Notes under the pieces: generated by a model
Seen by the model: only the letters and a program-made list of their open reading frames with translations
The model's database searches: none
Told to the model about the DNA's origin: nothing
From: Gracilinanus agilis
Taxonomy: Eukaryota
DNA: 64,000 nt
NCBI RefSeq assembly: GCF_016433145.1
Contig: NC_058135.1
Span: forward strand, 165,257,439-165,321,438
Direction of reading: 5' to 3'
Position numbers and translations under genes: made by a program
Shown here: positions 8,661-54,823 of the stretch, piece after piece
How the letters are laid out: each line of letters begins with the position of its first letter
Numbering within the stretch: the first letter of the stretch is position 1

Positions 8661-8888
8661 TTCAGACTCTTTGTGATCCTATTTAGAGTTTTTTTGGCAA
8701 AGATACTGGAGTGGTTCTCCATCCCCTTTTCCAGCTCATTTTACAGCTGAGGAAATTGAAGCAAACAGGTTTAAGTGACACGTTCATTTTCACATCACTA
8801 ATGTCTAAGGCCAGATTTGAACTCAGAAAGATGAGTCTTCCTGACTTCCAAGCCCAGCATTCTATCCACTGTTCCACCTAGCTGCCCC
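8661..8888 (-). mobile_element. MAR1-type SINE
   Basis: Reverse RTE tail (ttttggcaaagatactggagtggtt), CORE and ggggcagctaggtgg head. Confidence 0.85.
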
Positions 8889-24950: not shown

Positions 24951-25421
24951 TCAGACTGAAGTGACAGTCCTCACTTTAGCAGAGAGGGCTTGCTTGAACC
25001 TCCTCTTCAGGTCCTGCATATTGGGAGACTTTGGCCTAGGAATGAGAGAGGTTCTCCTCTTCTCTGGTGTGCTAGTGACCTGCTGTTTGTGACTCACTTC
25101 TTTGCACAGGACGTGGAAGGCATTGTAGACATCATTGTAATTCTCACTGACAGACACTTCGTAAAATGTGCAACCCAGCATGTTGGCCAGCTGCAGTCCA
25201 TGCTGTGGCTCTACCTGCTTGATATGGAGCAGATCTGCCTTGTTGGCCACAATGACAACTGGCAGCCGGGCCCCTGGGTGTAACTGCTGGACATGCTGGT
25301 GCAATTGGCCAATCAGCTCATAACTCTTGTAATCGATGATGGAGAAGACAATCACCACAGCATCAGCCCAGCGAATACATCTATTCAATTGTTCATTGCA
25401 GCTCAACCCTTGTTCGTGGAT
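24951..25421 (-). CDS. RASL11B: RASL11B coding exon 4 (156 aa + stop)
   Basis: Acceptor ctttctcggttttag|ATC. Encodes [23 protein letters not shown]...NKAD (G4)...EVSVSE (G5)...[18 protein letters not shown]. The four exons sum to 765 nt = 254 aa + TGA in one frame. Confidence 0.98.
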
Positions 25422-26124
25422 CTAAAACCGAGAAAGGTCATGAATTGATGGGGATAGAAAAAAGCCCAGTTTGGTCAACTTAAAGTCTAAGTCAGAAGAG
25501 TCTTTTGGACTCACACCATTGAGGGTCATAAATACAAATTACATTCCCACACATTTTGACTTTCTTAAGAATATGTTGATCCAGCTGCATGAAGCTGGAA
25601 TAAATAACCCTGCAGCTCACTACACTCAAGTGGAAAATTGACCTGCATAGTACTACACGCAGAGAGACTTTGTAGTTCCACAAAATGGGAAATTAGCTGG
25701 CTAGACAGTAAGTCTGGGGAAGTGAAGATATGAGCTGGAAGCATTTAAACCTGGAGAACTGCCCAGTTCAAGGGAGAGAGAGAGAGAGAGAGGAAAAAAA
25801 AAAAAAACCCACTATAACACTAGTATGGCTCTTTTGTCCACAGAGTAACTTTCCACAATATAAAACTGACTCTGAGTCTTAGTGTATATATCCACACATT
25901 TGGTTTTTAATACTAAAGTTTTTGGTTACAAGATTTTTTTCCCCATTTCAGACAGTAGACTTCTATACCCCAGAATTCCTCAAGCTGTGGCTGATCAGCT
26001 GCTAAAGAGATTCTCTTAATGCTCCATTAACTTACAACCTCTCCTTTCATAGCATTAGCTAGAGTAAGGACAATGCCACTTTGATGTAAAACAGATAATG
26101 TCTACGAAACTATAAGGATCTCAC

Positions 26125-26201
26125 CTGGACTCCTGGTGTATCTTGAACTTGAATTGCCAGTGTTTCTCCCTCTACTTGGACCTGCCGGGTATAAAGATTA
26201 C
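26125..26201 (-). CDS. RASL11B: RASL11B coding exon 3 (77 nt; not in the ORF track)
   Basis: Acceptor ttttcacttgaatag|GTAAT, donor CAG|GTGAGA. Encodes (G)[25 protein letters not shown] including the G3 motif DTPG, phase 1/0. Confidence 0.97.
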
Positions 26202-27573
26202 CTATTCAAGTGAAAAAGAAAAGAAAAAGGTTATTTATCCCCAAATGAGAAAGTTTTCAAAGCATTTCATTAATGGGGGGGGGGAAAACTAAACAAAATA
26301 AACCCATTTGCCCCAGTAAGTTCTAGTAACTTGAAATCTTATTAAGGTTTTTGTTTTTAACCAAAAGTCCATTGATACCAAAAGCAAAGCAATCTGCTGC
26401 TATTTAACAAAAGAATACAACATTATATTTATAGAGTCTGTTTTTTTATGACAGGAAACTCATTTGTTTTGAGAGGCTGACCTCTTCCCAAACTAAATTT
26501 CTATATATGAACAAGCATTTCCTCAAGTCTGTTTCCTTGCTGTAATTCATCAAATCCAAGAACATTGGAGTTGGCAGAGGCATGACATCATTTAATACAG
26601 CCCCCCAGTTTTACAGATGAGGAAACTGAGACAACAAGATTATGCCTGGCCCATGGTGCCACAGTTAATATGTGGCAGAGAACTTGGCCTCAGAAACCAA
26701 GTGGAATGCTGCTTTCCCTGCACCATGGTACCTTCTAATGTGCGTGTTTTTTCCAGTCCTGGATCACTACTTGACACATTTATCATTTAACATATCTGAC
26801 CTCTAAACAGGTTGTCAGATAGTTAAAAGTACAACCCACACCATCCACTAAAGAAAACACTTAAAATAATGATTGCCAAAACAAGAGCAAGTTGCCTTGA
26901 CTGATTTTATGGTGGCTAATAGTTTAGTGGGTATATTAAATAATTGCATATAGACCCTTCACATGTTTCTGAAGGTTTTAGCATACTGGATATGTGTATG
27001 AGTACATGTAATATATGTGTGTGTTCCTCGCCTCTGGTTCCTAATAACAAGGATTTTAAAATGTGTACTCATAATTATTCAGTCTAGCCCCTCCCAAAAA
27101 TAAAATCAAAGTCCCACTTATTTTTTTTTTCTTTTAGACACTACTAATGAAAGGGGGTAGGTTTAGGTTTATAACTACTCTGCTTTGGTCTTTGGTTTAA
27201 AAGGTCAAATCTGAAAGCCAGGACTACAGGGGGTAGGACCAGGCTATCTTTTTTATGACTCTAGCTACAGTGTTTTGGAGAGTGAGCCTAAGTACAAAGG
27301 GTACTTCCTACTGAGGCTCCAATAGTTAAAACATACCAAGGAGAAGAATTCTTTTTGGAGTAAAATGATGAATGAGTCCAGAATGGAACGAGGCCAGATG
27401 GTAGGGTGAAGGGATAGGGTGGGGGGAGGGAAGGAAAATTTTGTAAAGGCTGGAAGTCACAAATGTCAGGATGCTCACAGACTGGCTCTTTTTGAAGGAT
27501 TTACTTAATCCATACCAGTAATGGTACCAACCCAGCATTTCCCCCAAAAGAAGAGCTGTTAAAAGATGCTCAC

Positions 27574-27630
27574 CTGCATTTCTTTCATAGTCGCCAATGA
27601 ATCGTTTGGTCAGGAATCGTACCACCAGTG
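27574..27630 (-). CDS. RASL11B: RASL11B coding exon 2 (57 nt)
   Basis: Acceptor ttttctgacctacag|CA, donor CAG|GTGAGC. Encodes (A)LVVRFLTKRFIGDYERNA(G), phase 1/1. Confidence 0.97.
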
Positions 27631-28049
27631 CTGTAGGTCAGAAAAGAAAAAGGAAACCCGGTTATCCTTTGGAATGACAGGCTAACTGAGAGACCCACTA
27701 CCTGGGCTGTGAGCCCAGGCTCAGCAAATAGCTTCCCCAGGGAATGGGCGGCAGGAAGCCAAGTGAAATACCATTTCTACACTCATTGGCCCGGATCCTT
27801 GACCAGAACCACACTGGGAGAAGAGGGAAACAACAATTACTCTATTCGGGAGCTGGACTGATCATGTAGGGCAGTCCTCTGCCTCTGAGTAGGGCTGTAC
27901 CAAAGTCCGAACAGGTAAGTAGTAGTCCACATTTTTAAAAGGACCAAGAAAGCAACTTCACCATTTCCCCCAAGTGACTGGCTTCATGGTGAGAGGAAAT
28001 CAGAGATTAGAGACGATTAAGGAAGGTGGGGTTGGGGGACGAGAGTGGC

Positions 28050-29000
28050 AAGAGGTGGAGATCCGTAGGAGCTCCCAGATCCCCGATGCGCTTTACAACC
28101 CTTGCAATAAATAAGGACTATGATTACTCCCCTTCTCCAAATCGTAGTTGGAGGAGGAGGAAGTCACCTAGTGGCCAGCCAGAACAACCCGACCCTCCCA
28201 GAGCCAGTGCGGGTTCGGGCCCAGGACTCACCGGTCTTGCCGACTCCGCTAGCCCCCACGACAGCGATCTTGACTAGGCGGCGGCCCGACACTGCGCTCA
28301 GACAGCAGTCGATGGAGGCGGCGGCGGCGCTGCCGCTGCTGCCGGGAGTAGGGTATTCTGCAATGGTGCACATGTTCTGGATCAGGCGCATCGCCCCGGC
28401 CGAGGGCTGGACCGGACAAGGCGGGCGGGGCTGACTGGTCTGGCTAAGGGGGAAGATGGGCAGCCGCACCGGAGTCTCGGAGTGCACAGCGGCGGAGGCG
28501 GAGATGGAGGTGGAGGCAGCGGCAAGAAGCAGCGATAGCTCCCGGAGCTCTGCAAGAGGTTGTAGCCACTAAACGCTGCTCGAAAGCTCAAGCTTAGGGG
28601 CAGAGTTTGTGGCGGCTGTCTCCCAGCGCGCAGGCTATTTTGTGCTGATTTGGCCCTGCCCCTCGCCACCCGCAGCCAATCCAGTCATGGACATTGGGGA
28701 GACTCCGCCCCCTCCTGAGCCGTTGGCTGCAGCCCCTCCGCCCTTCTCCCCACCCCTCCGCCCCTCTCCCCTGCCTTCAGCCCCTGCTGAAAGGGGCGAG
28801 TCCAGTGCGGGGCCCCGTGAGGCTGCTGAGGCTTCCGGGACTGGGGAAAAGTGGGGCAGCCCAGACCTGCTGCCACACTACTCCCGGAGGTGAGCAACAT
28901 GTGCGTGTCTGAAAGCACCTGAAAAGGACACTCTTAGCCCTTAGGCATCCTCAAGGCTAGCCACGGGAGATGTGGGGGGCGCAGGTGGGCCAGGGGCACG
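28050..29000 (-). promoter_or_regulatory. RASL11B: CpG island / RASL11B promoter and 5'UTR
   Basis: Sharp CpG and GC enrichment in a CpG-poor window. GC boxes (ctccgccc) at about 28703, 28737 and 28756. CCAAT at 28676-28680 (+) and 28693-28697 (-). No upstream ATG in 28392-28620 on the - strand. A TSS near 28600 is inferred, not observed. Confidence 0.85.
28232..28391 (-). CDS. RASL11B: RASL11B coding exon 1 (53 codons + 1 nt)
   Basis: ATG at 28391-28389 in context gccggggcgATG. Encodes [53 protein letters not shown] with P-loop GxxxxGKT. Donor G|GTGAGT at 28231. Confidence 0.97.
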
Positions 29001-44350: not shown

Positions 44351-46774
44351 AGAGGTGGAGGAGGGAAAGTCTAGTCAGTAGAACTCTTTAAGACAATATT
44401 TTTTTTTCCTTTTTGCTCTCTCACCCCAGATTCCCAGAACTGACTCTAGGGCTGTGCAGGTAATAAAAACAACACAGTGATGGCGCATAATGTTCTATCC
44501 TTTGAGACACGCATGTTCCTTGATCTCGTCAGTCAGAATTGTTTAGGCTTGTCCCAAGCAATGAAGAACTTGAATTTAATTTGAGCAATTAGTTCACCTG
44601 ACCCCTGATGTCCCTAGGCCAGAAAGTGAAACAACATAAGACTCAAAACTCAAAACAGAAAGGTAAAATGGCACTCCTGTGTGTCTTGGTTGTTTTTCAT
44701 TTGCCCCAACATTGTTATATAATATGCCTGCCGTAGTACCATTCAGAAAGTGAATGACGTTGCTGGGCGAGGGATAACCTTCAGAGGAGTGAAAGGCAAG
44801 TCACTGGGGTTGGCTGGCTGTTAACAAATACCACTGCTCTACTTTAGTCCTGAATTGTCAACAAAAGCCATTGCTCACCTCGCTTCATATGTTCTGTCAA
44901 TGTGACCATTATTATGCCATTTAGTGGTTCCAGCAGGGGTTGGGAGAGAATTCTATTTTTGGCACAGATACAGAGTTTCTCTGGGCCTGACACAACTGCT
45001 TATGCTCAGCTTTACCCATCTGCACCCTACTTAAACCTCTTCACAATTGGATGCTTTATGGGCCAGTCATGGCTGTCTATGTACCACACTTCTTCTTCCC
45101 ATTGGTTTTTGGACAGGAAGCTTTTCATATTCATCACACAACAATGAGTGACAATGTAATATGATTAATGAAAATATAGGACTTGAAGTCAAGAAGACCT
45201 GAATTTTAATACCATCTCACTTACAGGCTATTCAGGAGCATGTCACTTAACCTCATAAATACTTAGTTTTCTCATCTGTAAATTGGGGATAATGATACTT
45301 GTATTACCTACCTCTTATTGATAATTATGAGGAAAGTACCTTAAAAGCCCTAAAGCAGTATCTCTGTAAATTATTATTGTTGGTGGTGCAACTGAAGGAT
45401 AGGGAGCTACAATGAAGAACCACGAGCAGGCCTTTGAAGGGATGGAGCCAGGTGGTAGAATACAGGCAAGGACTTGCCTGAGCTCCTCCAAGTTCCCCTC
45501 TGAACAACTTTAAAATAGCACCTAAATACTTAAAATTCACCTTAATGAATTCCAGAGAAGGAAAATCAACAAAAGGATGGGGTGAAACAGTTTTCCTTCC
45601 AAAGACAACTTAGTAAGTCAGCAGCAAAGATATGTCTCACTAGAGTGAATGTGGAACGTAGGCCAGTGCACAAGCCATTGGGGTGACTGCATGGGAAGTG
45701 ATGACTTCTGGAACTCTCAGTCCACAGACAGTAAGGCTTATCAACTGATAAGGAAGATTATGGGGCAACTGGGTGGCCAAATAAATAGAGATCCAGGCCT
45801 GGGGTCAGGAGGACCTGGTTTTAGATACTTCCTAGCTGTATGACCCTAGGCAAATCACTTAACACCATTTGCCTAGCATTTTCTCTTCTATCTTAGAGTC
45901 GTTAAAAAAGAAAGTAAGGATTTTTTTTTTAAAGGAGATCACATAAGACATTTTGCTGGCATTGTGTGCAAGACTCTGGCCATATGTGGTTCTGGCTATT
46001 AGTCCCAAGGCAAGAAGGAGCAATAGTACCCTAAAGCATTCAGCCACAGTGGAGCAAGGACCCTGGTCACAGTTCTGGGGTAGAAAAGTATTTGTGGCTG
46101 CTCATAGACTACAGCACAGGTCAGGAGAATAGTGATTACATTTCTTCTTAGGTCATACCACCTTAGAAGAACTGAAAACTTATAGAACCTTAGAACTAGC
46201 TTTGAAAATAGCCCAAGTTAAAATTTAAAAGACAAGAAATAGGCTGGAAAAATAAGCACACAATAAAAAAAAAAAAAAAAAAGAACTTGACCATAGAGAG
46301 TTACTAAAGGGACAAGGAAGATCAAAACACAATTTCAGAAGTCAACAATGCCAAAACAGCTACGTGCAGGCTCTGACCCAAAAAGAATTCCTGGGAAAGT
46401 CAAAAAGGATTCAAAAATCAAATAAGAGTTCTAGAGGAAAAATTGGGGAAAAAAATGAGAATGACATAAGAAAATCATGAAAAAAGTCAACAGCTTGAAG
46501 GAGAAGCACGCAAGCGCACGCGCGCGCACACACACACACACATACACACACTCACAACTGAAGAAGATAGTACCTTTAAAAACAAGAAACCAAATGGTAA
46601 AAGAGACACAACAATCAACTGAAGAGAATCGACTGCTCATTAAAAAAATAGAATTGACCAAATGGAAAAAAGATGTATAAAAATTCACTGCTAAAAAAAA
46701 ACAAACTTCTTAAAAAGTAGAATTGGGCACATGGTAAGAGAAGTAGAAAAGCTCTCTGAAGAAATTAATTCTTT

Positions 46775-46953: not shown

Positions 46954-47139
46954 GAAATTAATTCTTTAAAAAAAAAATTAGAATTGGGCAAGTGGAAGCT
47001 AATGACATCATAAGACATCAAGAAATAGTAAAACAAAATCAAAAGAATGAAAAAATAGGAGAAAATGTGAAAATATCTCATTGGAAAAATAACTAACTTA
47101 GAAAATAGATCCAAGAGATATAATTTAAGAACTATTAGA

Positions 47140-47418
47140 TCCAGAGAAAGAACTGTGGGAGTAGAAAGAAGAAAAACAACTTCTTGATCACATGGGTTGA
47201 TGGGGATATGATTGGGGATGTAGACTCTAAATAATCACCCTAATGCAAATATTAATAATGTGGAAATAGTCTTGATCAATGGCACATGTAAAACCCAGTA
47301 GAATTGCTCATTGGCTACAGGAGGGGGATGGGAGGAAGGAGGGAAAGAACATGAATCATGTAACCATGGAAAAATAGTCTAAATTAATTAATTAAATAAA
47401 ATTCTTCAAATAAAAAAG
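47140..47418 (+). mobile_element. 5'-truncated younger L1 (3'UTR only) inserted in the old ORF1
   Basis: TSD gaactattaga at 47129-47139 and 47419-47429; A-rich tail; same family as the - strand copy at 51672-52330. Confidence 0.85.
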
Positions 47419-51119: not shown

Positions 51120-51362
51120 CTTTCAATTGTTTCTGCTTCTTCACTATCCCATTTGGGGTTTTCTTGACCAAAGATACTGGAGTGGTTTGTCATTTCCTTC
51201 TTTAGCTCATTTTAAAGATGAGGAAACTGAGGCAAACAGGGTTTAGTGACTTGCCCAAAGTCACACAGCTAGTATGAGTCTGAAGCTAGTTTTGAATTTA
51301 GGAAGATGAGTCTTCCTGACTCCAAGCCCAGCACTTTAACCCCTGAGCCACCTAGTTGCCCC
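51120..51362 (-). mobile_element. MAR1-type SINE
   Basis: Reverse RTE tail, CORE and ggggcaactaggtggctc head. Confidence 0.88.
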
Positions 51363-51671
51363 TTCTCACATGGAATATGCATTTAACAAATATTTCTTGA
51401 ACTGAATTAGCTGTGGTTGCATAATTAACAAGTTTCTGAATCACGGTTCAAACCCAGATTTCCTAAATCCAAGACCTATCCTCTTGTCTACTTGCTTGTG
51501 CTATCTCTTATCTGGTATAGCTGGTACTTCATACTACATGTTTTCTATTTCTTTGAATAATTACATTATTTTTATGTCTCTATTTCTCTCAGTTGGGTTG
51601 GCTGTTATAAGCCTATTTTTGTTTGGTTCTATAAATTCTTCTGGGTTTTCTAATTTATTTTCTATATTGAT

Positions 51672-52330
51672 TTTTTTCTGTTTTTTAAAATTTAATTAAT
51701 TAATTAATTGAGAATATTTTTCCATGGTTACATGATTCATGTTCTTCCCCTCCCCTACACACCCCCCTCCCATAGCCAATAAGCAATTTCACTGGGTTTT
51801 ACATGTGTCATTGATCAAGACCTATTTCCATATTATTAATATTTGCGCTAGAGTGATCATTTAGAGCAGTGATTCCCAAAGTGGACACTACTGCCCCCTG
51901 GTGGGTGCTGCAGTGATCCAGAGAGGCGGTGATGGCCACAGGTGCATTTATCTTTCCTATTAATTGCTATTAAAATTTTAAAAAAAATTAATTTCCAGGG
52001 GGCTAAGTAATATTTTTTTCTGGAAAGGGAGAGGTAGGCCAAAAAAGTTTGGGAACCACTGATTTAGAGTCTACATCCTCAATCATATCCCCATCCAACC
52101 ATGTGATTAAGCAGTTGTTTTCTTCTGTGTTTCTGCTCCCACAGTTCTTTCTCTGGATGTGGGTAGTGTTCTTTCTCATAAGTCCCTCAGAAATGTCTTT
52201 GATCAGTGCATTGCTGTCCATTACATTCGATTGTGCCACAGTGTATCTGTTTCTGTGTATAATGTTCTCCTGGTTCTATTCTTTTCACTCTGCAGCCATT
52301 CCTAGAGTGGCCTTTTTCTTTATCATTTGC
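51672..52330 (-). mobile_element. L1 3' end, interrupted by a MITE
   Basis: L1 3'UTR continues on both sides of the MITE target-site duplication. Confidence 0.85.
51867..52061 (+). mobile_element. hAT/Charlie-type MITE, copy 1 (195 bp)
   Basis: TIRs CAGTGATTCCCAAA / TTTGGGAACCACTG; perfect 8-bp TSD atttagag (51859-51866, 52062-52069) with central TA. Confidence 0.96.
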
Positions 52331-52639
52331 TACCATTTTTTTTCTTTCCTACATTTTAACTTGATTTCCTTCTATAACTACTTACTTTCTTTAAGTTCTT
52401 CAATTTTGTCTTGAGATTTTCTTTCTAGTGTTAGTTCTTGCTTTATTTGAGAGGATCTCTGTATTTCTACCCCCTGCTTTGTATCTAGTACTTTTAGCTT
52501 GATAGTCTTTTAAAAAATTATATTGATACTTCTTTGCTTATGTCTAATTTTCATTGTGATTTCTTGACCATTTGCCTTCTCCTTAATGCTTCTATTCAGT
52601 TTTGTTTATTTATGTAAGAGGTATTGAAGAGCCAACCAC

Positions 52640-52835
52640 CCTTCAAAACTCTTAGCTTGCCATCTTGATTTATCTGCAAATTTGATATTCACTCCATTTA
52701 TGCCTTTCTCCAAATTAGTAATAAAAATGTTAAGCAACACAGGGACAAAGAAAACTCCCTGGAGTACTGTATTGGAATCTACCCTTGAGATTAATGCTGA
52801 ATGGTTAATGACTACTTTCTAAATTATATTATTCA
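52640..52835 (-). mobile_element. L3/CR1 RT fragment
   Basis: Antisense FADD-like segment (tatctgcaaatttgat) and GVPQGS-like segment. Confidence 0.7.
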
Positions 52836-53089
52836 ACCAGTTCTAAGGGAGTCCTAGAACCACGCTGAACCATCTCCTAAGAGTCTATTGTTTAATTTTC
52901 AGTATGAGCATTTATACCTTAGAAATTTGCAAAGGCTATAAATCAGGGTTTGATTTATTATGTTATTGATTTCTATACTTAAGAAAGTGATGGAGAAAAT
53001 GTTAATAGTGTAGACTAAATCCAAATTGTATTATATATAAACCCTGCCTCCCCCCAGCCAGTTGTTAAATATTTACCAGCAGACCACTG
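52835..53089 (-). mobile_element. MER63-like hAT-Blackjack MITE remnant
   Basis: Terminus agccagttgttaaatatttaccagcagaccactg matches the reverse of the MER63 end as I recall it (CAGTGGTGTGCTGGTAAATGTTTAACAACCGG). Confidence 0.65.
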
Positions 53090-53131
53090 AGACTCCAAAT
53101 CCAACTGGTCGTGCTTCCATATATCCTATAT

Positions 53132-53324
53132 CAGTGGTTCCCAAACTTTTTTGGCCTATTGCCCCCTTTCCAGAAAAAATATTACTTAGCGCCCCCTGGA
53201 AATTGTGAAACTATTTATTGAACTAAGAATAGAATGTAATACAAAAAAAGTGTGGCCATCACCACCTCCCTGGATTGCTGCAGCACCCACCAGAGGGCGG
53301 AGGCGCCCACTTTGGGAATCACTG
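53132..53324 (-). mobile_element. hAT/Charlie-type MITE, copy 2 (193 bp), inverted relative to copy 1
   Basis: TIRs CAGTGGTTCCCAAA / TTTGGGAATCACTG; perfect 8-bp TSD tcctatat (53124-53131, 53325-53332). Confidence 0.96.
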
Positions 53325-54646
53325 TCCTATATCTAGCTATCTATTTATCTTTCTCATAAGAATGTTATATGTTTTGCTGACATGTAAGTGTATTATGGTT
53401 ATAGAAATTCTCTGATCTAGCCCTCTAGTAATCCCATGAAAAGGAATAAGACTTGATCGTTTCTGGTATAGAGATAGCCTAGTTAGAGAAGAAAGCATAG
53501 CTGAGACATAAAATTTAAGATAAAATTTTAACATATAAATACCGAGGATGTCAAGTATATACCTTAGAGCCCACTGACAGTTTCTCTTCTATTTTAAAAA
53601 GTCATTGTGGATAACCAAAGAAGCAAATGAATGCCTTTTGTAGTTAGAGCAAAATGTATAATTTCTGTGTCATTTTCAGATCTGTGATGTGGAACTGATG
53701 ATAGCCTTAACCTTTTTGGAGAGGTCAGGTATATGATGATGCTTTTTTTCACCAGGTTAAAAATAAATGGAGTTTTAGCCAGAGTTTTAATGAGATGAAA
53801 AAAGGCATCCTTTTCTCTTAGATGAGAGAGCTCTTTGCCTATTAACCCACTCCTTTGGAGACACTGGAAAAGCAATAAGTTTTGAATTACTTCTGCAACA
53901 GCTGCAACGGTTTCCTCATCTGACACCAGACAAGACTGTTGCTGCTCCTGCCAATCACAACCAACTCCTCTTAGTTGAAAAGTTGAAGCCTTAGTCCCCT
54001 TTTTTGTTCTTCCACCTTATTTTAAACATCACTAACTGCATGCCTAATGGGCATTTTATTTTTTCTCTTATAGATTCAAACTGCCTGGGCCTTAGACTTG
54101 GGAAGGTCTAAGTGAGTTAGACCTCAAGCGGGGTTATTTACAAGTTTATTTGATTATTCTTTTTCACTTTACCTAAATGGTACCCAAAAAATTCCCCAGG
54201 CAGTTATTGAGGAGAGGCCTTTCCCTACCCACTTGACAGAGAATCTCTAGAGAATCTCTTATCTACTGTCTAAGTTGGAATGAGTGACTTTCTTTAAACT
54301 TATCCCCATCTCAGAGATAGGCATTTCTACATTTCACACCAGTTTTCTAATGTTGGCGAACCACTCTTTATTGGTTCTTTTGCATCCCATTATGCCCTAT
54401 GTGCAAATTTCCCTGAAGCCTTTGTAAACCTCAAAGAGGTCCCAAAACACTGGTGGGAGGAAGACACAAGCAGTGAGTTTCCTGACAACATTCCTGCCTG
54501 CCATTGAAGCAAAGCTCTTATACTTGGATTAAGAGATGATGTAAGAAATTGCAACAAGGATATGTGTAACCAAAGAAAAAAGAAAAAAAGATGTTGTACT
54601 CTTGTAAGTACCACAATACCTATGAATAATTGAAAGCTAGAGGAAA

Positions 54647-54823
54647 GGGACAGGTAGATGGCTCAGGGGATAGAGAGCCAGACCTAGAGATAGGAGGTCC
54701 TGGGGTCAAATGTGACCTCAGGCACTTCTTAGCTGTGTGACCTTGGGCAAGTCACTTAGCTTAATTGCCTAGCCCTTACCATTCTTCTGCCTTGGAACCA
54801 ATTAACAGCATTGATTCTAAGAT

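What the first reader, a model, noticed from the sequence alone, without database searches (positions are those of the whole stretch)
51867..53324. Inverted pair of hAT MITEs creates a divergent CTCF-motif pair (candidate transposon-built boundary) about 24 kb upstream of RASL11B
Seen: each MITE carries a CTCF core. Copy 1 has CCACCAGGGGGCAGTA on the - strand (core 51891-51904). Copy 2 has CCACCAGAGGGCGG on the + strand (53287-53300). Because the copies are inverted, the motifs point away from each other, about 1.4 kb apart. Established: the CTCF core consensus is CCASYAGRKGGCRS, and divergent CTCF pairs typify domain boundaries. TE-driven spread of CTCF sites in mammals is mainly described for SINEs. 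Inference: two independent DNA-transposon insertions may have assembled a lineage-specific insulator that limits the RASL11B regulatory domain.
Basis: partly seen in the sequence, partly recalled or inferred. Interest (0 to 1): 0.78.

Follow-up and report, generated by a model that had tools for sequence, protein, structure and literature searches.

The report
Two CTCF-motif transposon relics, inverted
Two old copies of a small "jumping gene" relic lie head-to-head about 24 kb upstream of a Ras-family gene, and each carries a strong binding motif for the genome-folding protein CTCF. The motif was inherited from the transposon family, the layout is what chance gives one time in four, and nothing available here shows that they act as a chromatin boundary.

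Summary

- **The two elements.** Copies of a ~195-bp hAT-type MITE lie at 51867-52061 and 53132-53324 in inverted orientation. Each has its own 8-bp target-site duplication (ATTTAGAG, TCCTATAT), so they are independent insertions.
- **The motifs.** Each copy carries one full CTCF core near the same end. They are the only two strict consensus hits in 64 kb. They score 22.4 and 20.3 bits (p about 2e-8 and 9e-8) and point away from each other, 1.4 kb apart.
- **Origin of the motif.** It sits at the same position in both copies, so it came with the family and did not evolve at this site. The four differences between the two 19-mers are all at tolerated positions, but that is not beyond chance.
- **Layout.** Divergent orientation has a 1-in-4 prior.

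CTCF occupancy, methylation, insulation and orthologous presence could not be tested.

This scan has noted the same MITE-plus-CTCF idea in many other windows of this genome, in convergent, tandem and divergent layouts. One follow-up there reached the same verdict.

Verdict: a real, sequence-competent pair of potential CTCF sites. The boundary function is an untested hypothesis of low prior.

The parts
51859..51866 (.). Left target-site duplication of copy 1 (ATTTAGAG)
   Evidence: The same 8-mer recurs at 52062-52069. The paralogous repeat at about 47.2 kb holds a single uninterrupted copy of it.
51867..52061 (+). hAT-type MITE copy 1, 195 bp, with the CTCF-motif end on the left
   Evidence: 15-nt terminal inverted repeats at both ends, and a full-length alignment to copy 2. 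It is inserted into an older interspersed repeat.
51889..51907 (-). CTCF 19-mer of copy 1 (core 51891-51904), 22.4 bits, with no CpG in the core
   Evidence: p = 1.7e-8.
51995..52003 (-). Second, inverted copy of the 9-mer GCCCCCTGG inside copy 1 (subterminal repeat)
   Evidence: the window has only three exact copies of this 9-mer, and all three lie in the two MITEs. See, pair I9.
52062..52069 (.). Right target-site duplication of copy 1 (ATTTAGAG)
52070..53123 (.). Spacer of about 1.05 kb between the two elements. It is AT-rich and has no credible coding ORF. Its first ~90 bp continue the older repeat that copy 1 split.
53124..53131 (.). Left target-site duplication of copy 2 (TCCTATAT)
53132..53324 (-). 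hAT-type MITE copy 2, 193 bp, inverted relative to copy 1, with the CTCF-motif end on the right
53187..53205 (-). Partial CTCF-like word in copy 2 (8.7 bits). It matches the 3' 13 bases of the consensus and lacks the 5' CCA. It contains the subterminal GCCCCCTGG.
53284..53302 (+). CTCF 19-mer of copy 2 (core 53287-53300), 20.3 bits, with a CpG at 53298-53299
   Evidence: p = 8.9e-8.
53325..53332 (.). Right target-site duplication of copy 2 (TCCTATAT)
47139..47403 (-). Paralogous copy of the older repeat that copy 1 interrupted. It serves as an 'empty site' control.
   Evidence: 88-90% identity to both flanks of copy 1. The two alignments overlap by exactly the 8-bp target.
51132..51365 (-). 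Neighbouring tRNA-headed SINE whose head carries a weak CTCF-like word (51343-51361, 10.5 bits). This looks like the repeat type published as the opossum CTCF carrier.
   Evidence: PMC3368268 names MAR_Mdo (MIR family). Equating this SINE with MAR_Mdo is my inference.
24951..28487 (-). Ras-family gene (taken as RASL11B), from the first coding exon to the last exon. It is the gene whose regulatory domain was proposed to be limited.

Best explanation
These are two independent, old insertions of one non-autonomous hAT (Charlie-like) MITE family. The family sequence itself contains a near-consensus CTCF core about 25 nt from one end. Each copy therefore arrived as a ready-made, sequence-competent CTCF site. 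The head-to-head orientation of the two insertions makes the motifs divergent as a by-product.

The most likely state is neutral transposon relics in AT-rich, repeat-rich intergenic DNA. I estimate about a one-in-three chance that at least one copy is CTCF-occupied in some tissue. Copy 1 is the better candidate, because its core has lost its CpG and so cannot be methylated there. I see no specific reason to think the pair delimits the regulatory domain of the Ras gene.

Shown: the element structure, the independence of the insertions, the motif strength and orientation, and the inheritance of the motif. Inferred: neutrality and the occupancy odds.
For: - Structure and independent insertion.
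- The motif is at the homologous position in both copies, so it predates both insertions.
- Motif strength.
- No excess conservation. The 19-mers differ at 4 of 19 positions, against 16% for the whole element. All four differences are at degenerate positions, but about 12% of neutral pairs would keep the 12 informative positions intact (0.84^12).
- CpG decay looks ordinary. From the alignment I infer at least 5 ancestral CpGs, of which copy 1 keeps 1 and copy 2 keeps 3.
- Setting: 34-38% GC, nested in repeats, no ORFs, no Rfam family.
- A divergent layout has a prior of 1/4.
- Notes from this scan (leads only) report the same family in many other windows, in convergent, tandem and divergent pairs. 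Random orientation predicts exactly that.
- hAT-borne CTCF sites are documented in human (PMC6979391, PMC9902604, PMC7156512).
Against: - Both motifs score far above the usual thresholds and are the only strong ones in 64 kb. If CTCF binds anywhere here, it binds at these sites.
- The window's only two copies lie within 1.5 kb of each other. That has roughly a 5% chance for two uniformly placed insertions. It could reflect local hopping, a preference for a target region, or retention.
- All high-information motif positions are intact in both copies despite about 9% divergence per copy.
- No occupancy data could be consulted, so neutrality is a prior, not a result.
Confidence: 0.68

Rival explanations
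1. Both copies are occupied by CTCF and stall cohesin arriving from opposite sides. Together they form a lineage-specific insulating boundary that closes the upstream side of the Ras gene's regulatory domain.
For: - There are two strong motifs in the boundary-typical divergent layout (left on -, right on +), 1.4 kb apart.
- Copy 1's motif faces the gene, as the right-hand anchor of a loop containing it should.
- TE-derived CTCF sites, including hAT elements, do form loop anchors and TAD boundaries in other mammals (PMC6979391, PMC9902604).
Against: - There are no occupancy, methylation or contact data.
- The motif is inherited rather than evolved in place.
- The layout has a 25% prior.
- No strong + strand partner motif lies on the gene side within the window (best 12.0 bits at 44927).
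- The setting is repeat-rich and AT-rich.
- Only a minority of motif-bearing TE copies in any family are bound (general knowledge; not quantified here).
Confidence: 0.08
2. One or both copies bind CTCF as ordinary, redundant TE-derived sites. This is the raw material for binding-site turnover, and it has no domain-level role at this locus.
For: - The motifs score p < 1e-7.
- Copy 1's core is free of CpG.
- Co-opted or redundant TE CTCF sites are common, for example the MER20 turnover case in PMC6979391.
Against: The limits are the same as above: there are no binding data. Schmidt et al. (PMC3368268) tied the opossum liver CTCF expansion only to a MIR-family SINE. Their method keys on species-specific words and would tend to miss a carrier of the canonical word. 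PMC7156512 raises that same caveat about their method.
Confidence: 0.2
3. The C-rich word is primarily a subterminal transposase-recognition repeat of the element, and its likeness to a CTCF site is incidental. In vivo the copies are methylated and silent, with no CTCF role at all.
For: - The 9-mer GCCCCCTGG occurs in inverted orientation near both ends of the element. Its only three exact copies in the window lie in the two MITEs (pair I9). This is the pattern of hAT subterminal repeats.
- The second copy of the repeat gives only a partial CTCF match (8.7 bits).
Against: - A MITE family with the same termini, found in an unrelated animal host, lacks any CTCF-grade motif: 0 of 120 copies reach 13 bits. 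That terminal class therefore does not require the full CTCF word.
- A transposase site and a CTCF site are not mutually exclusive.
Confidence: 0.03
4. The relevant feature is the inverted repeat itself. If the locus is transcribed, the two arms pair into an imperfect duplex of about 190 bp, which would be an ADAR or small-RNA substrate like inverted SINE pairs.
For: - The arms of 82 nt (84% complementary) and 54 nt (91%) pair in the predicted fold of 51867-53324.
Against: There is no evidence of transcription. The site is intergenic, there is no Rfam match, and no shuffle control was possible at this length.
Confidence: 0.01

Closest known systems
MER20 / MER91B and other hAT (hAT-Charlie, hAT-Tip100) DNA-transposon relics that supply CTCF sites at loop anchors and TAD boundaries in human (PMC6979391, PMC9902604, PMC7156512, PMC10589630)
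   Same: It is a short non-autonomous hAT element that carries a CTCF motif as part of its own sequence. Copies are scattered by cut-and-paste transposition. Each copy is a potential oriented anchor.
   Different: This is a different family in a marsupial, and I did not establish its name. No binding or looping data exist here.
SINE-driven CTCF expansions: B2 in rodents, SINEC_Cf in dog, MAR_Mdo (MIR family) in opossum (Schmidt et al. 2012, PMC3368268)
   Same: A lineage-specific repeat carries the M1 core, with no canonical M2 evident next to it here. The host species and the concept are the same.
   Different: This is a DNA transposon, not a retroposon. Its motif is much closer to the consensus (20-22 bits) than the CTCF-like word in the head of the neighbouring SINE copies in this window (at most 10.5 bits). 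It was not reported in that study.
Clustered or divergent CTCF sites at TAD boundaries (established knowledge of loop extrusion and the convergent rule)
   Same: The pair has the divergent left(-)/right(+) layout within a cluster of less than 2 kb.
   Different: A boundary is defined by insulation in contact maps and by occupancy. Neither is known for this locus.

Membership tests
hAT-superfamily non-autonomous element (MITE) | 8-bp target-site duplication | tested here: met
   ATTTAGAG flanks copy 1 and TCCTATAT flanks copy 2. A paralogous empty site holds a single ATTTAGAG.
hAT-superfamily non-autonomous element (MITE) | Short terminal inverted repeats starting with CAG-type ends | tested here: met
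   The 15-nt CAGTGRTTCCCAAAS sits at all four ends and nowhere else in the window.
hAT-superfamily non-autonomous element (MITE) | Small size and no transposase ORF | tested here: met
   The copies are 195 and 193 bp. No ORF beyond spurious read-through was found.
hAT-superfamily non-autonomous element (MITE) | An autonomous hAT partner with matching termini in the same genome | not testable with these tools
   No access to the rest of this genome. Scans of the viral and prokaryote collections found no copies.
Functional CTCF binding site | Match to the CTCF core motif | tested here: met
   Strict IUPAC core. PWM scores of 22.4 and 20.3 bits, p < 1e-7. The matrix was recalled from memory; its consensus was checked against PMC10589630.
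Functional CTCF binding site | In vivo occupancy by CTCF, with cohesin | not testable with these tools
No peak tables are held for this locus.
Functional CTCF binding site | Unmethylated motif, or protection of CpGs from decay | tested here: inconclusive
   Of at least 5 inferred ancestral CpGs, copy 1 keeps 1 and copy 2 keeps 3 (read from the alignment). The numbers are too small, and they fit ordinary methylated decay.
Insulating domain boundary | Divergent orientation of clustered CTCF sites | tested here: met
   Left motif on -, right motif on +, 1396 bp apart. The prior for this layout by chance is 1/4.
Insulating domain boundary | Insulation minimum or loop anchors in contact maps, and an effect on neighbouring gene regulation | not testable with these tools
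   No Hi-C or Micro-C data are accessible. The literature search found no opossum study of this locus.
TE family that disperses CTCF sites (B2 / MER20 kind) | The motif is part of the family sequence, not a local mutation | tested here: met
   The motif lies at the same alignment columns in both independent copies. Only two copies were available.
TE family that disperses CTCF sites (B2 / MER20 kind) | Many genomic copies that keep the motif, enriched among bound sites | not testable with these tools
   The only support is unverified scan notes: 33 notes on the same idea in this genome. The metagenome scan returned a different family.

The most novel reading that the evidence does not exclude
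This hAT MITE family is a genuine DNA-transposon vehicle of functional CTCF sites in the opossum. The 2012 word-enrichment analysis missed it because the family carries the canonical, universally used CTCF word. On this reading, the pair at 51.9-53.3 kb is an occupied, divergent, transposon-built boundary upstream of the Ras gene.
Probability: 0.07. Interest if true: 0.55.

Novelty: new member of a known kind. Interest (0 to 1): 0.24.

Why it matters
If the family proved to be widely bound, it would give marsupials a cut-and-paste route for spreading CTCF anchors. That route would be independent of the SINE waves described so far and parallel to MER20 and MER91B in eutherians. It would be a useful natural experiment on how 3D genome architecture is rewired.

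This particular pair matters only if it is occupied and insulating. As it stands, it is a well-defined, cheaply testable candidate, not a result. The practical value of this check is threefold:
- the coordinates, orientation and motif quality are now verified;
- the motif is shown to be inherited from the family;
- the decisive data sets are named.

Tried and rejected
1. **Occupancy test.** I asked look-up of sequencing runs for ChIP libraries holding 51600-53600.

2. **More family copies from metagenomes.** A scan of metagenome contigs with a both-termini pattern returned 120 loci, but they are another family. It is a ~186-bp hAT MITE in an unidentified animal host, and it shares only the ~15-22 nt termini. 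The loci gave no blastn hit to the window at E <= 1e-10; with copy 1 as query only the 20-27 nt termini matched. None of the 120 copies has a CTCF-grade motif. It serves only as a negative control.

3. **More family copies elsewhere.** Patterns specific to the CTCF end found nothing in the viral or prokaryote genome collections.

4. **The same locus in other assemblies.** An exact-product look-up of a nearby 165-aa ORF found nothing on record.

5. **Family name.** A full-text search for the terminal sequences found no paper. Searches on opossum hAT elements and MITEs gave only the OC1 and hAT-1_MEu literature, so the Repbase/Dfam name is not established.

6. **Composite-transposon idea.** The two MITEs did not mobilise the spacer as one unit, because the outer flanks (ATTTAGAG and TCCTATAT) differ.

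7. **Gene name.** Pfam, the Atlas and PDB give only 'Ras family, nearest RERG'. I ran no further search on this.

8. **RNA families.** There is no Rfam family anywhere in the window.

Full report
**What is there**

Reading 51600-53600 shows two short elements with the same ends.
- Copy 1 runs from 51867 to 52061 (195 bp). ATTTAGAG lies immediately on both sides of it.
- Copy 2 runs from 53132 to 53324 (193 bp). TCCTATAT lies immediately on both sides of it.
- The 15-nt terminal inverted repeat CAGTGRTTCCCAAAS occurs four times in the 64-kb window. These are the four element ends and nothing else.
- Aligned in reverse complement, the copies match over their full length. The two end regions are well kept, and the AT-rich middle has small indels. 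Over 186 aligned bases the p-distance is 0.16 and K2P is 0.18.
- A sensitive blastn of both copies against the window finds no further copy or fragment.

Eight-base duplications, CAG-type terminal repeats, a size under 200 bp and no coding capacity define a non-autonomous hAT element (MITE). Different duplications mean two separate insertion events. The outer flanks differ too, so this is not one composite element.

A further control came from the window itself. Copy 1 interrupts an older interspersed repeat. A paralog of that repeat at 47139-47403 (- strand) matches both flanks at 88-90% identity. The two alignments overlap by exactly the 8-bp target, which is present there once and uninterrupted. 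This is a paralogous 'empty site'.

**The motifs**

- The strict IUPAC core CCASYAGRKGGCRS matches only twice in the window, at 51891-51904 on the - strand and 53287-53300 on the + strand. Dinucleotide shuffles expect 0.01 matches.
- I scored the window with the JASPAR MA0139.1 count matrix as I remember it. The matrix is from memory. Its consensus TGGCCACCAGGGGGCGCTA agrees with the canonical motif printed in PMC10589630.
- The two 19-mers score 22.4 and 20.3 bits out of a maximum of 29.5. Exact p-values are 1.7e-8 and 8.9e-8. The next best site in the window scores 12.7 bits.
- The left motif is on the - strand and the right motif on the + strand. They point away from each other, 1396 bp apart.
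- Copy 2's core holds a CpG at 53298-53299. In copy 1 the homologous CpG has decayed to CA, which the motif tolerates.

**Where the motif came from**

The motif occupies the same alignment columns in both copies, about 25 nt from the same end. It was therefore part of the element before either insertion. It did not evolve at this locus.

- The two 19-mers differ at four positions (11, 16, 18, 19). All four are degenerate or low-information positions.
- That looks suggestive. However, with 16% pairwise divergence, about 12% of neutral pairs would keep the 12 informative positions intact. It is not evidence of constraint.
- From the alignment I infer at least five ancestral CpGs. Copy 1 keeps one and copy 2 keeps three. 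That is unremarkable for methylated germline DNA, and the numbers are too small to say more.
- The 9-mer GCCCCCTGG, which is the 3' half of the CTCF match, occurs again in inverted orientation toward the other end of the element. All three exact copies of this 9-mer in the window lie in the two MITEs (pair I9).
- That is the pattern of hAT subterminal repeats. The CTCF-like word may therefore have begun as transposase-recognition sequence. This is an inference.
- The second occurrence gives only a partial CTCF match (8.7 bits in copy 2).

**Surroundings**

- The elements lie in 34-38% GC DNA. There are no credible ORFs and no Rfam family.
- Interspersed repeats surround them. A tRNA-headed SINE at 51132-51365 has about 18 relatives in the window.
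- The head of that SINE carries a weak CTCF-like word of at most 10.5 bits. It looks like the MIR-family SINE that Schmidt et al. named as the opossum CTCF carrier (PMC3368268). Equating the two is my inference.
- An assembly gap of 330 N lies near 54.9-55.2 kb between GA and GGAA microsatellites. I left it alone.
- On the - strand there is a Ras-family gene. Its last-exon ORF is 24951-25406 (Pfam Ras, E = 1e-15; nearest solved relative RERG).
- Its first coding exon has the ATG near 28391, inside a 63% GC island. The MITEs are thus 23.5-24.9 kb upstream, as stated.
- The name RASL11B fits my memory of that protein's N-terminus. No tool confirmed it.
I did not verify it independently.

**Attempts to go beyond the sequence**

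- *Occupancy.* The decisive test is CTCF occupancy. Opossum liver CTCF and STAG1 ChIP-seq exist (PMC3368268). I asked the sequencing-run finder for ChIP libraries holding this stretch. I neither retried nor sought a way around it, so no read-level evidence is available.
- *More family copies.* I scanned metagenome contigs with a pattern requiring both termini at MITE spacing. It returned 120 loci, but they are a different family.
  - It is a ~186-bp hAT MITE with 8-bp duplications (52 of 120 perfect) and a median 8.7% divergence from its consensus.
  - Its host is an unidentified animal whose contigs carry LINE endonuclease and reverse-transcriptase ORFs and a FAM102/EEIG1-like ORF.
  - It shares only the first 15-22 nt with the window elements. 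The loci gave no blastn hit to the window at E <= 1e-10, apart from those termini.
  - None of the 120 copies reaches 13 bits on the CTCF matrix; the maximum is 10.1. The full CTCF word is therefore not a requirement of this terminal class.
- *Other collections.* Patterns specific to the CTCF end found nothing in the viral or prokaryote collections. An exact-product look-up of a nearby ORF found nothing.
- *Consequence.* I cannot give the family's copy number or the share of copies that keep the motif.
- *Scan notes.* Notes from this scan are unchecked leads, not evidence. They report the same 'hAT MITE with CTCF core' in many other windows of this genome: 33 notes hold all three search words. 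The layouts reported are convergent, co-oriented and divergent. One follow-up there reached the verdict I reach here. If the family is that common, close pairs must arise by chance many times, and a quarter of them will be divergent.

**Literature**

- Schmidt et al. 2012 tied opossum-specific CTCF words to a MIR-family SINE, with bound sites 'in the hundreds'. They do not mention DNA transposons.
- Their screen keyed on words over-represented in one species. It is therefore poorly suited to a repeat that carries the canonical word used in all mammals. Diehl et al. raise the same caveat about that method (PMC7156512).
[quoted passage not shown] A MER20 insertion is shown replacing a decayed ancestral anchor (PMC6979391).
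- MER20 and MER91B are enriched at loop anchors and TAD boundaries (PMC9902604).
- hAT elements also stand out in an in-silico screen of 3D folding (PMC10589630).
- I found no paper in the held library on this opossum family or on this locus.

**Verdict**

The mechanism I think most likely is this: two neutral insertions of a motif-bearing MITE that happen to lie head-to-head. I put about one chance in three on at least one copy being occupied in some tissue, and under one in ten on the pair being a working boundary for the Ras gene.

Two things keep the stronger reading alive. These are the only strong motifs in 64 kb. And the window's only two copies sit within 1.5 kb of each other, which has roughly a 5% chance for two uniformly placed insertions (a post hoc figure). 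The concept of hAT relics supplying oriented CTCF anchors is established in eutherians. At best this is a new member of a known kind.

Noticed in passing
L001-L120 (e.g. L001:3702-3887): A ~186-bp hAT MITE family in host DNA within five JGI metagenomes (contig prefixes Ga0210059, JGI24158J21664, JGI24159J19872, JGI24021J15306, JGI24022J15233). Its terminal 15-22 nt are the same as those of the opossum MITE, but the interior is unrelated and has no CTCF motif. The host is an animal (LINE ORFs, a FAM102/EEIG1-like ORF) and was not identified. The shared termini could mean a related hAT transposase lineage in a distant host.
   Followed up: partly
window:47139-47403: A paralog of the older repeat that copy 1 split. 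It is uninterrupted and holds one copy of the 8-bp target, so it works as an empty-site control inside the same window.
   Followed up: yes
window:51132-51365 and 54633-54800 (plus about 16 more copies, e.g. heads at 8866, 30631, 46931): A tRNA-headed SINE whose head (GGCAGCTAGGTGGC...) is a weak CTCF-like word of 8-10.5 bits. It probably belongs to the MIR-family SINE type published as the opossum CTCF carrier. One copy lies 530 bp left of copy 1's motif and in the same orientation.
   Followed up: partly
window:54826-55337: An assembly gap of 330 N, flanked by a (GA)46 and a (GGAA)22 microsatellite.
   Followed up: no
window:28001-29000: A CpG-island-like block (63% GC) over the first coding exon and presumed promoter of the Ras-family gene. 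It holds two moderate CTCF-matrix hits on the - strand (28703-28721 and 28159-28177, both about 12.7 bits).
   Followed up: no
window:17001-18000: Strong strand asymmetry (GC skew -0.48, AT skew -0.26 over 1 kb), probably a pyrimidine-rich simple repeat. I did not examine it.
   Followed up: no
window:51867-53324: If this stretch is transcribed as one RNA, the two MITE arms are predicted to pair into a long imperfect duplex. There is no evidence of transcription.
   Followed up: partly
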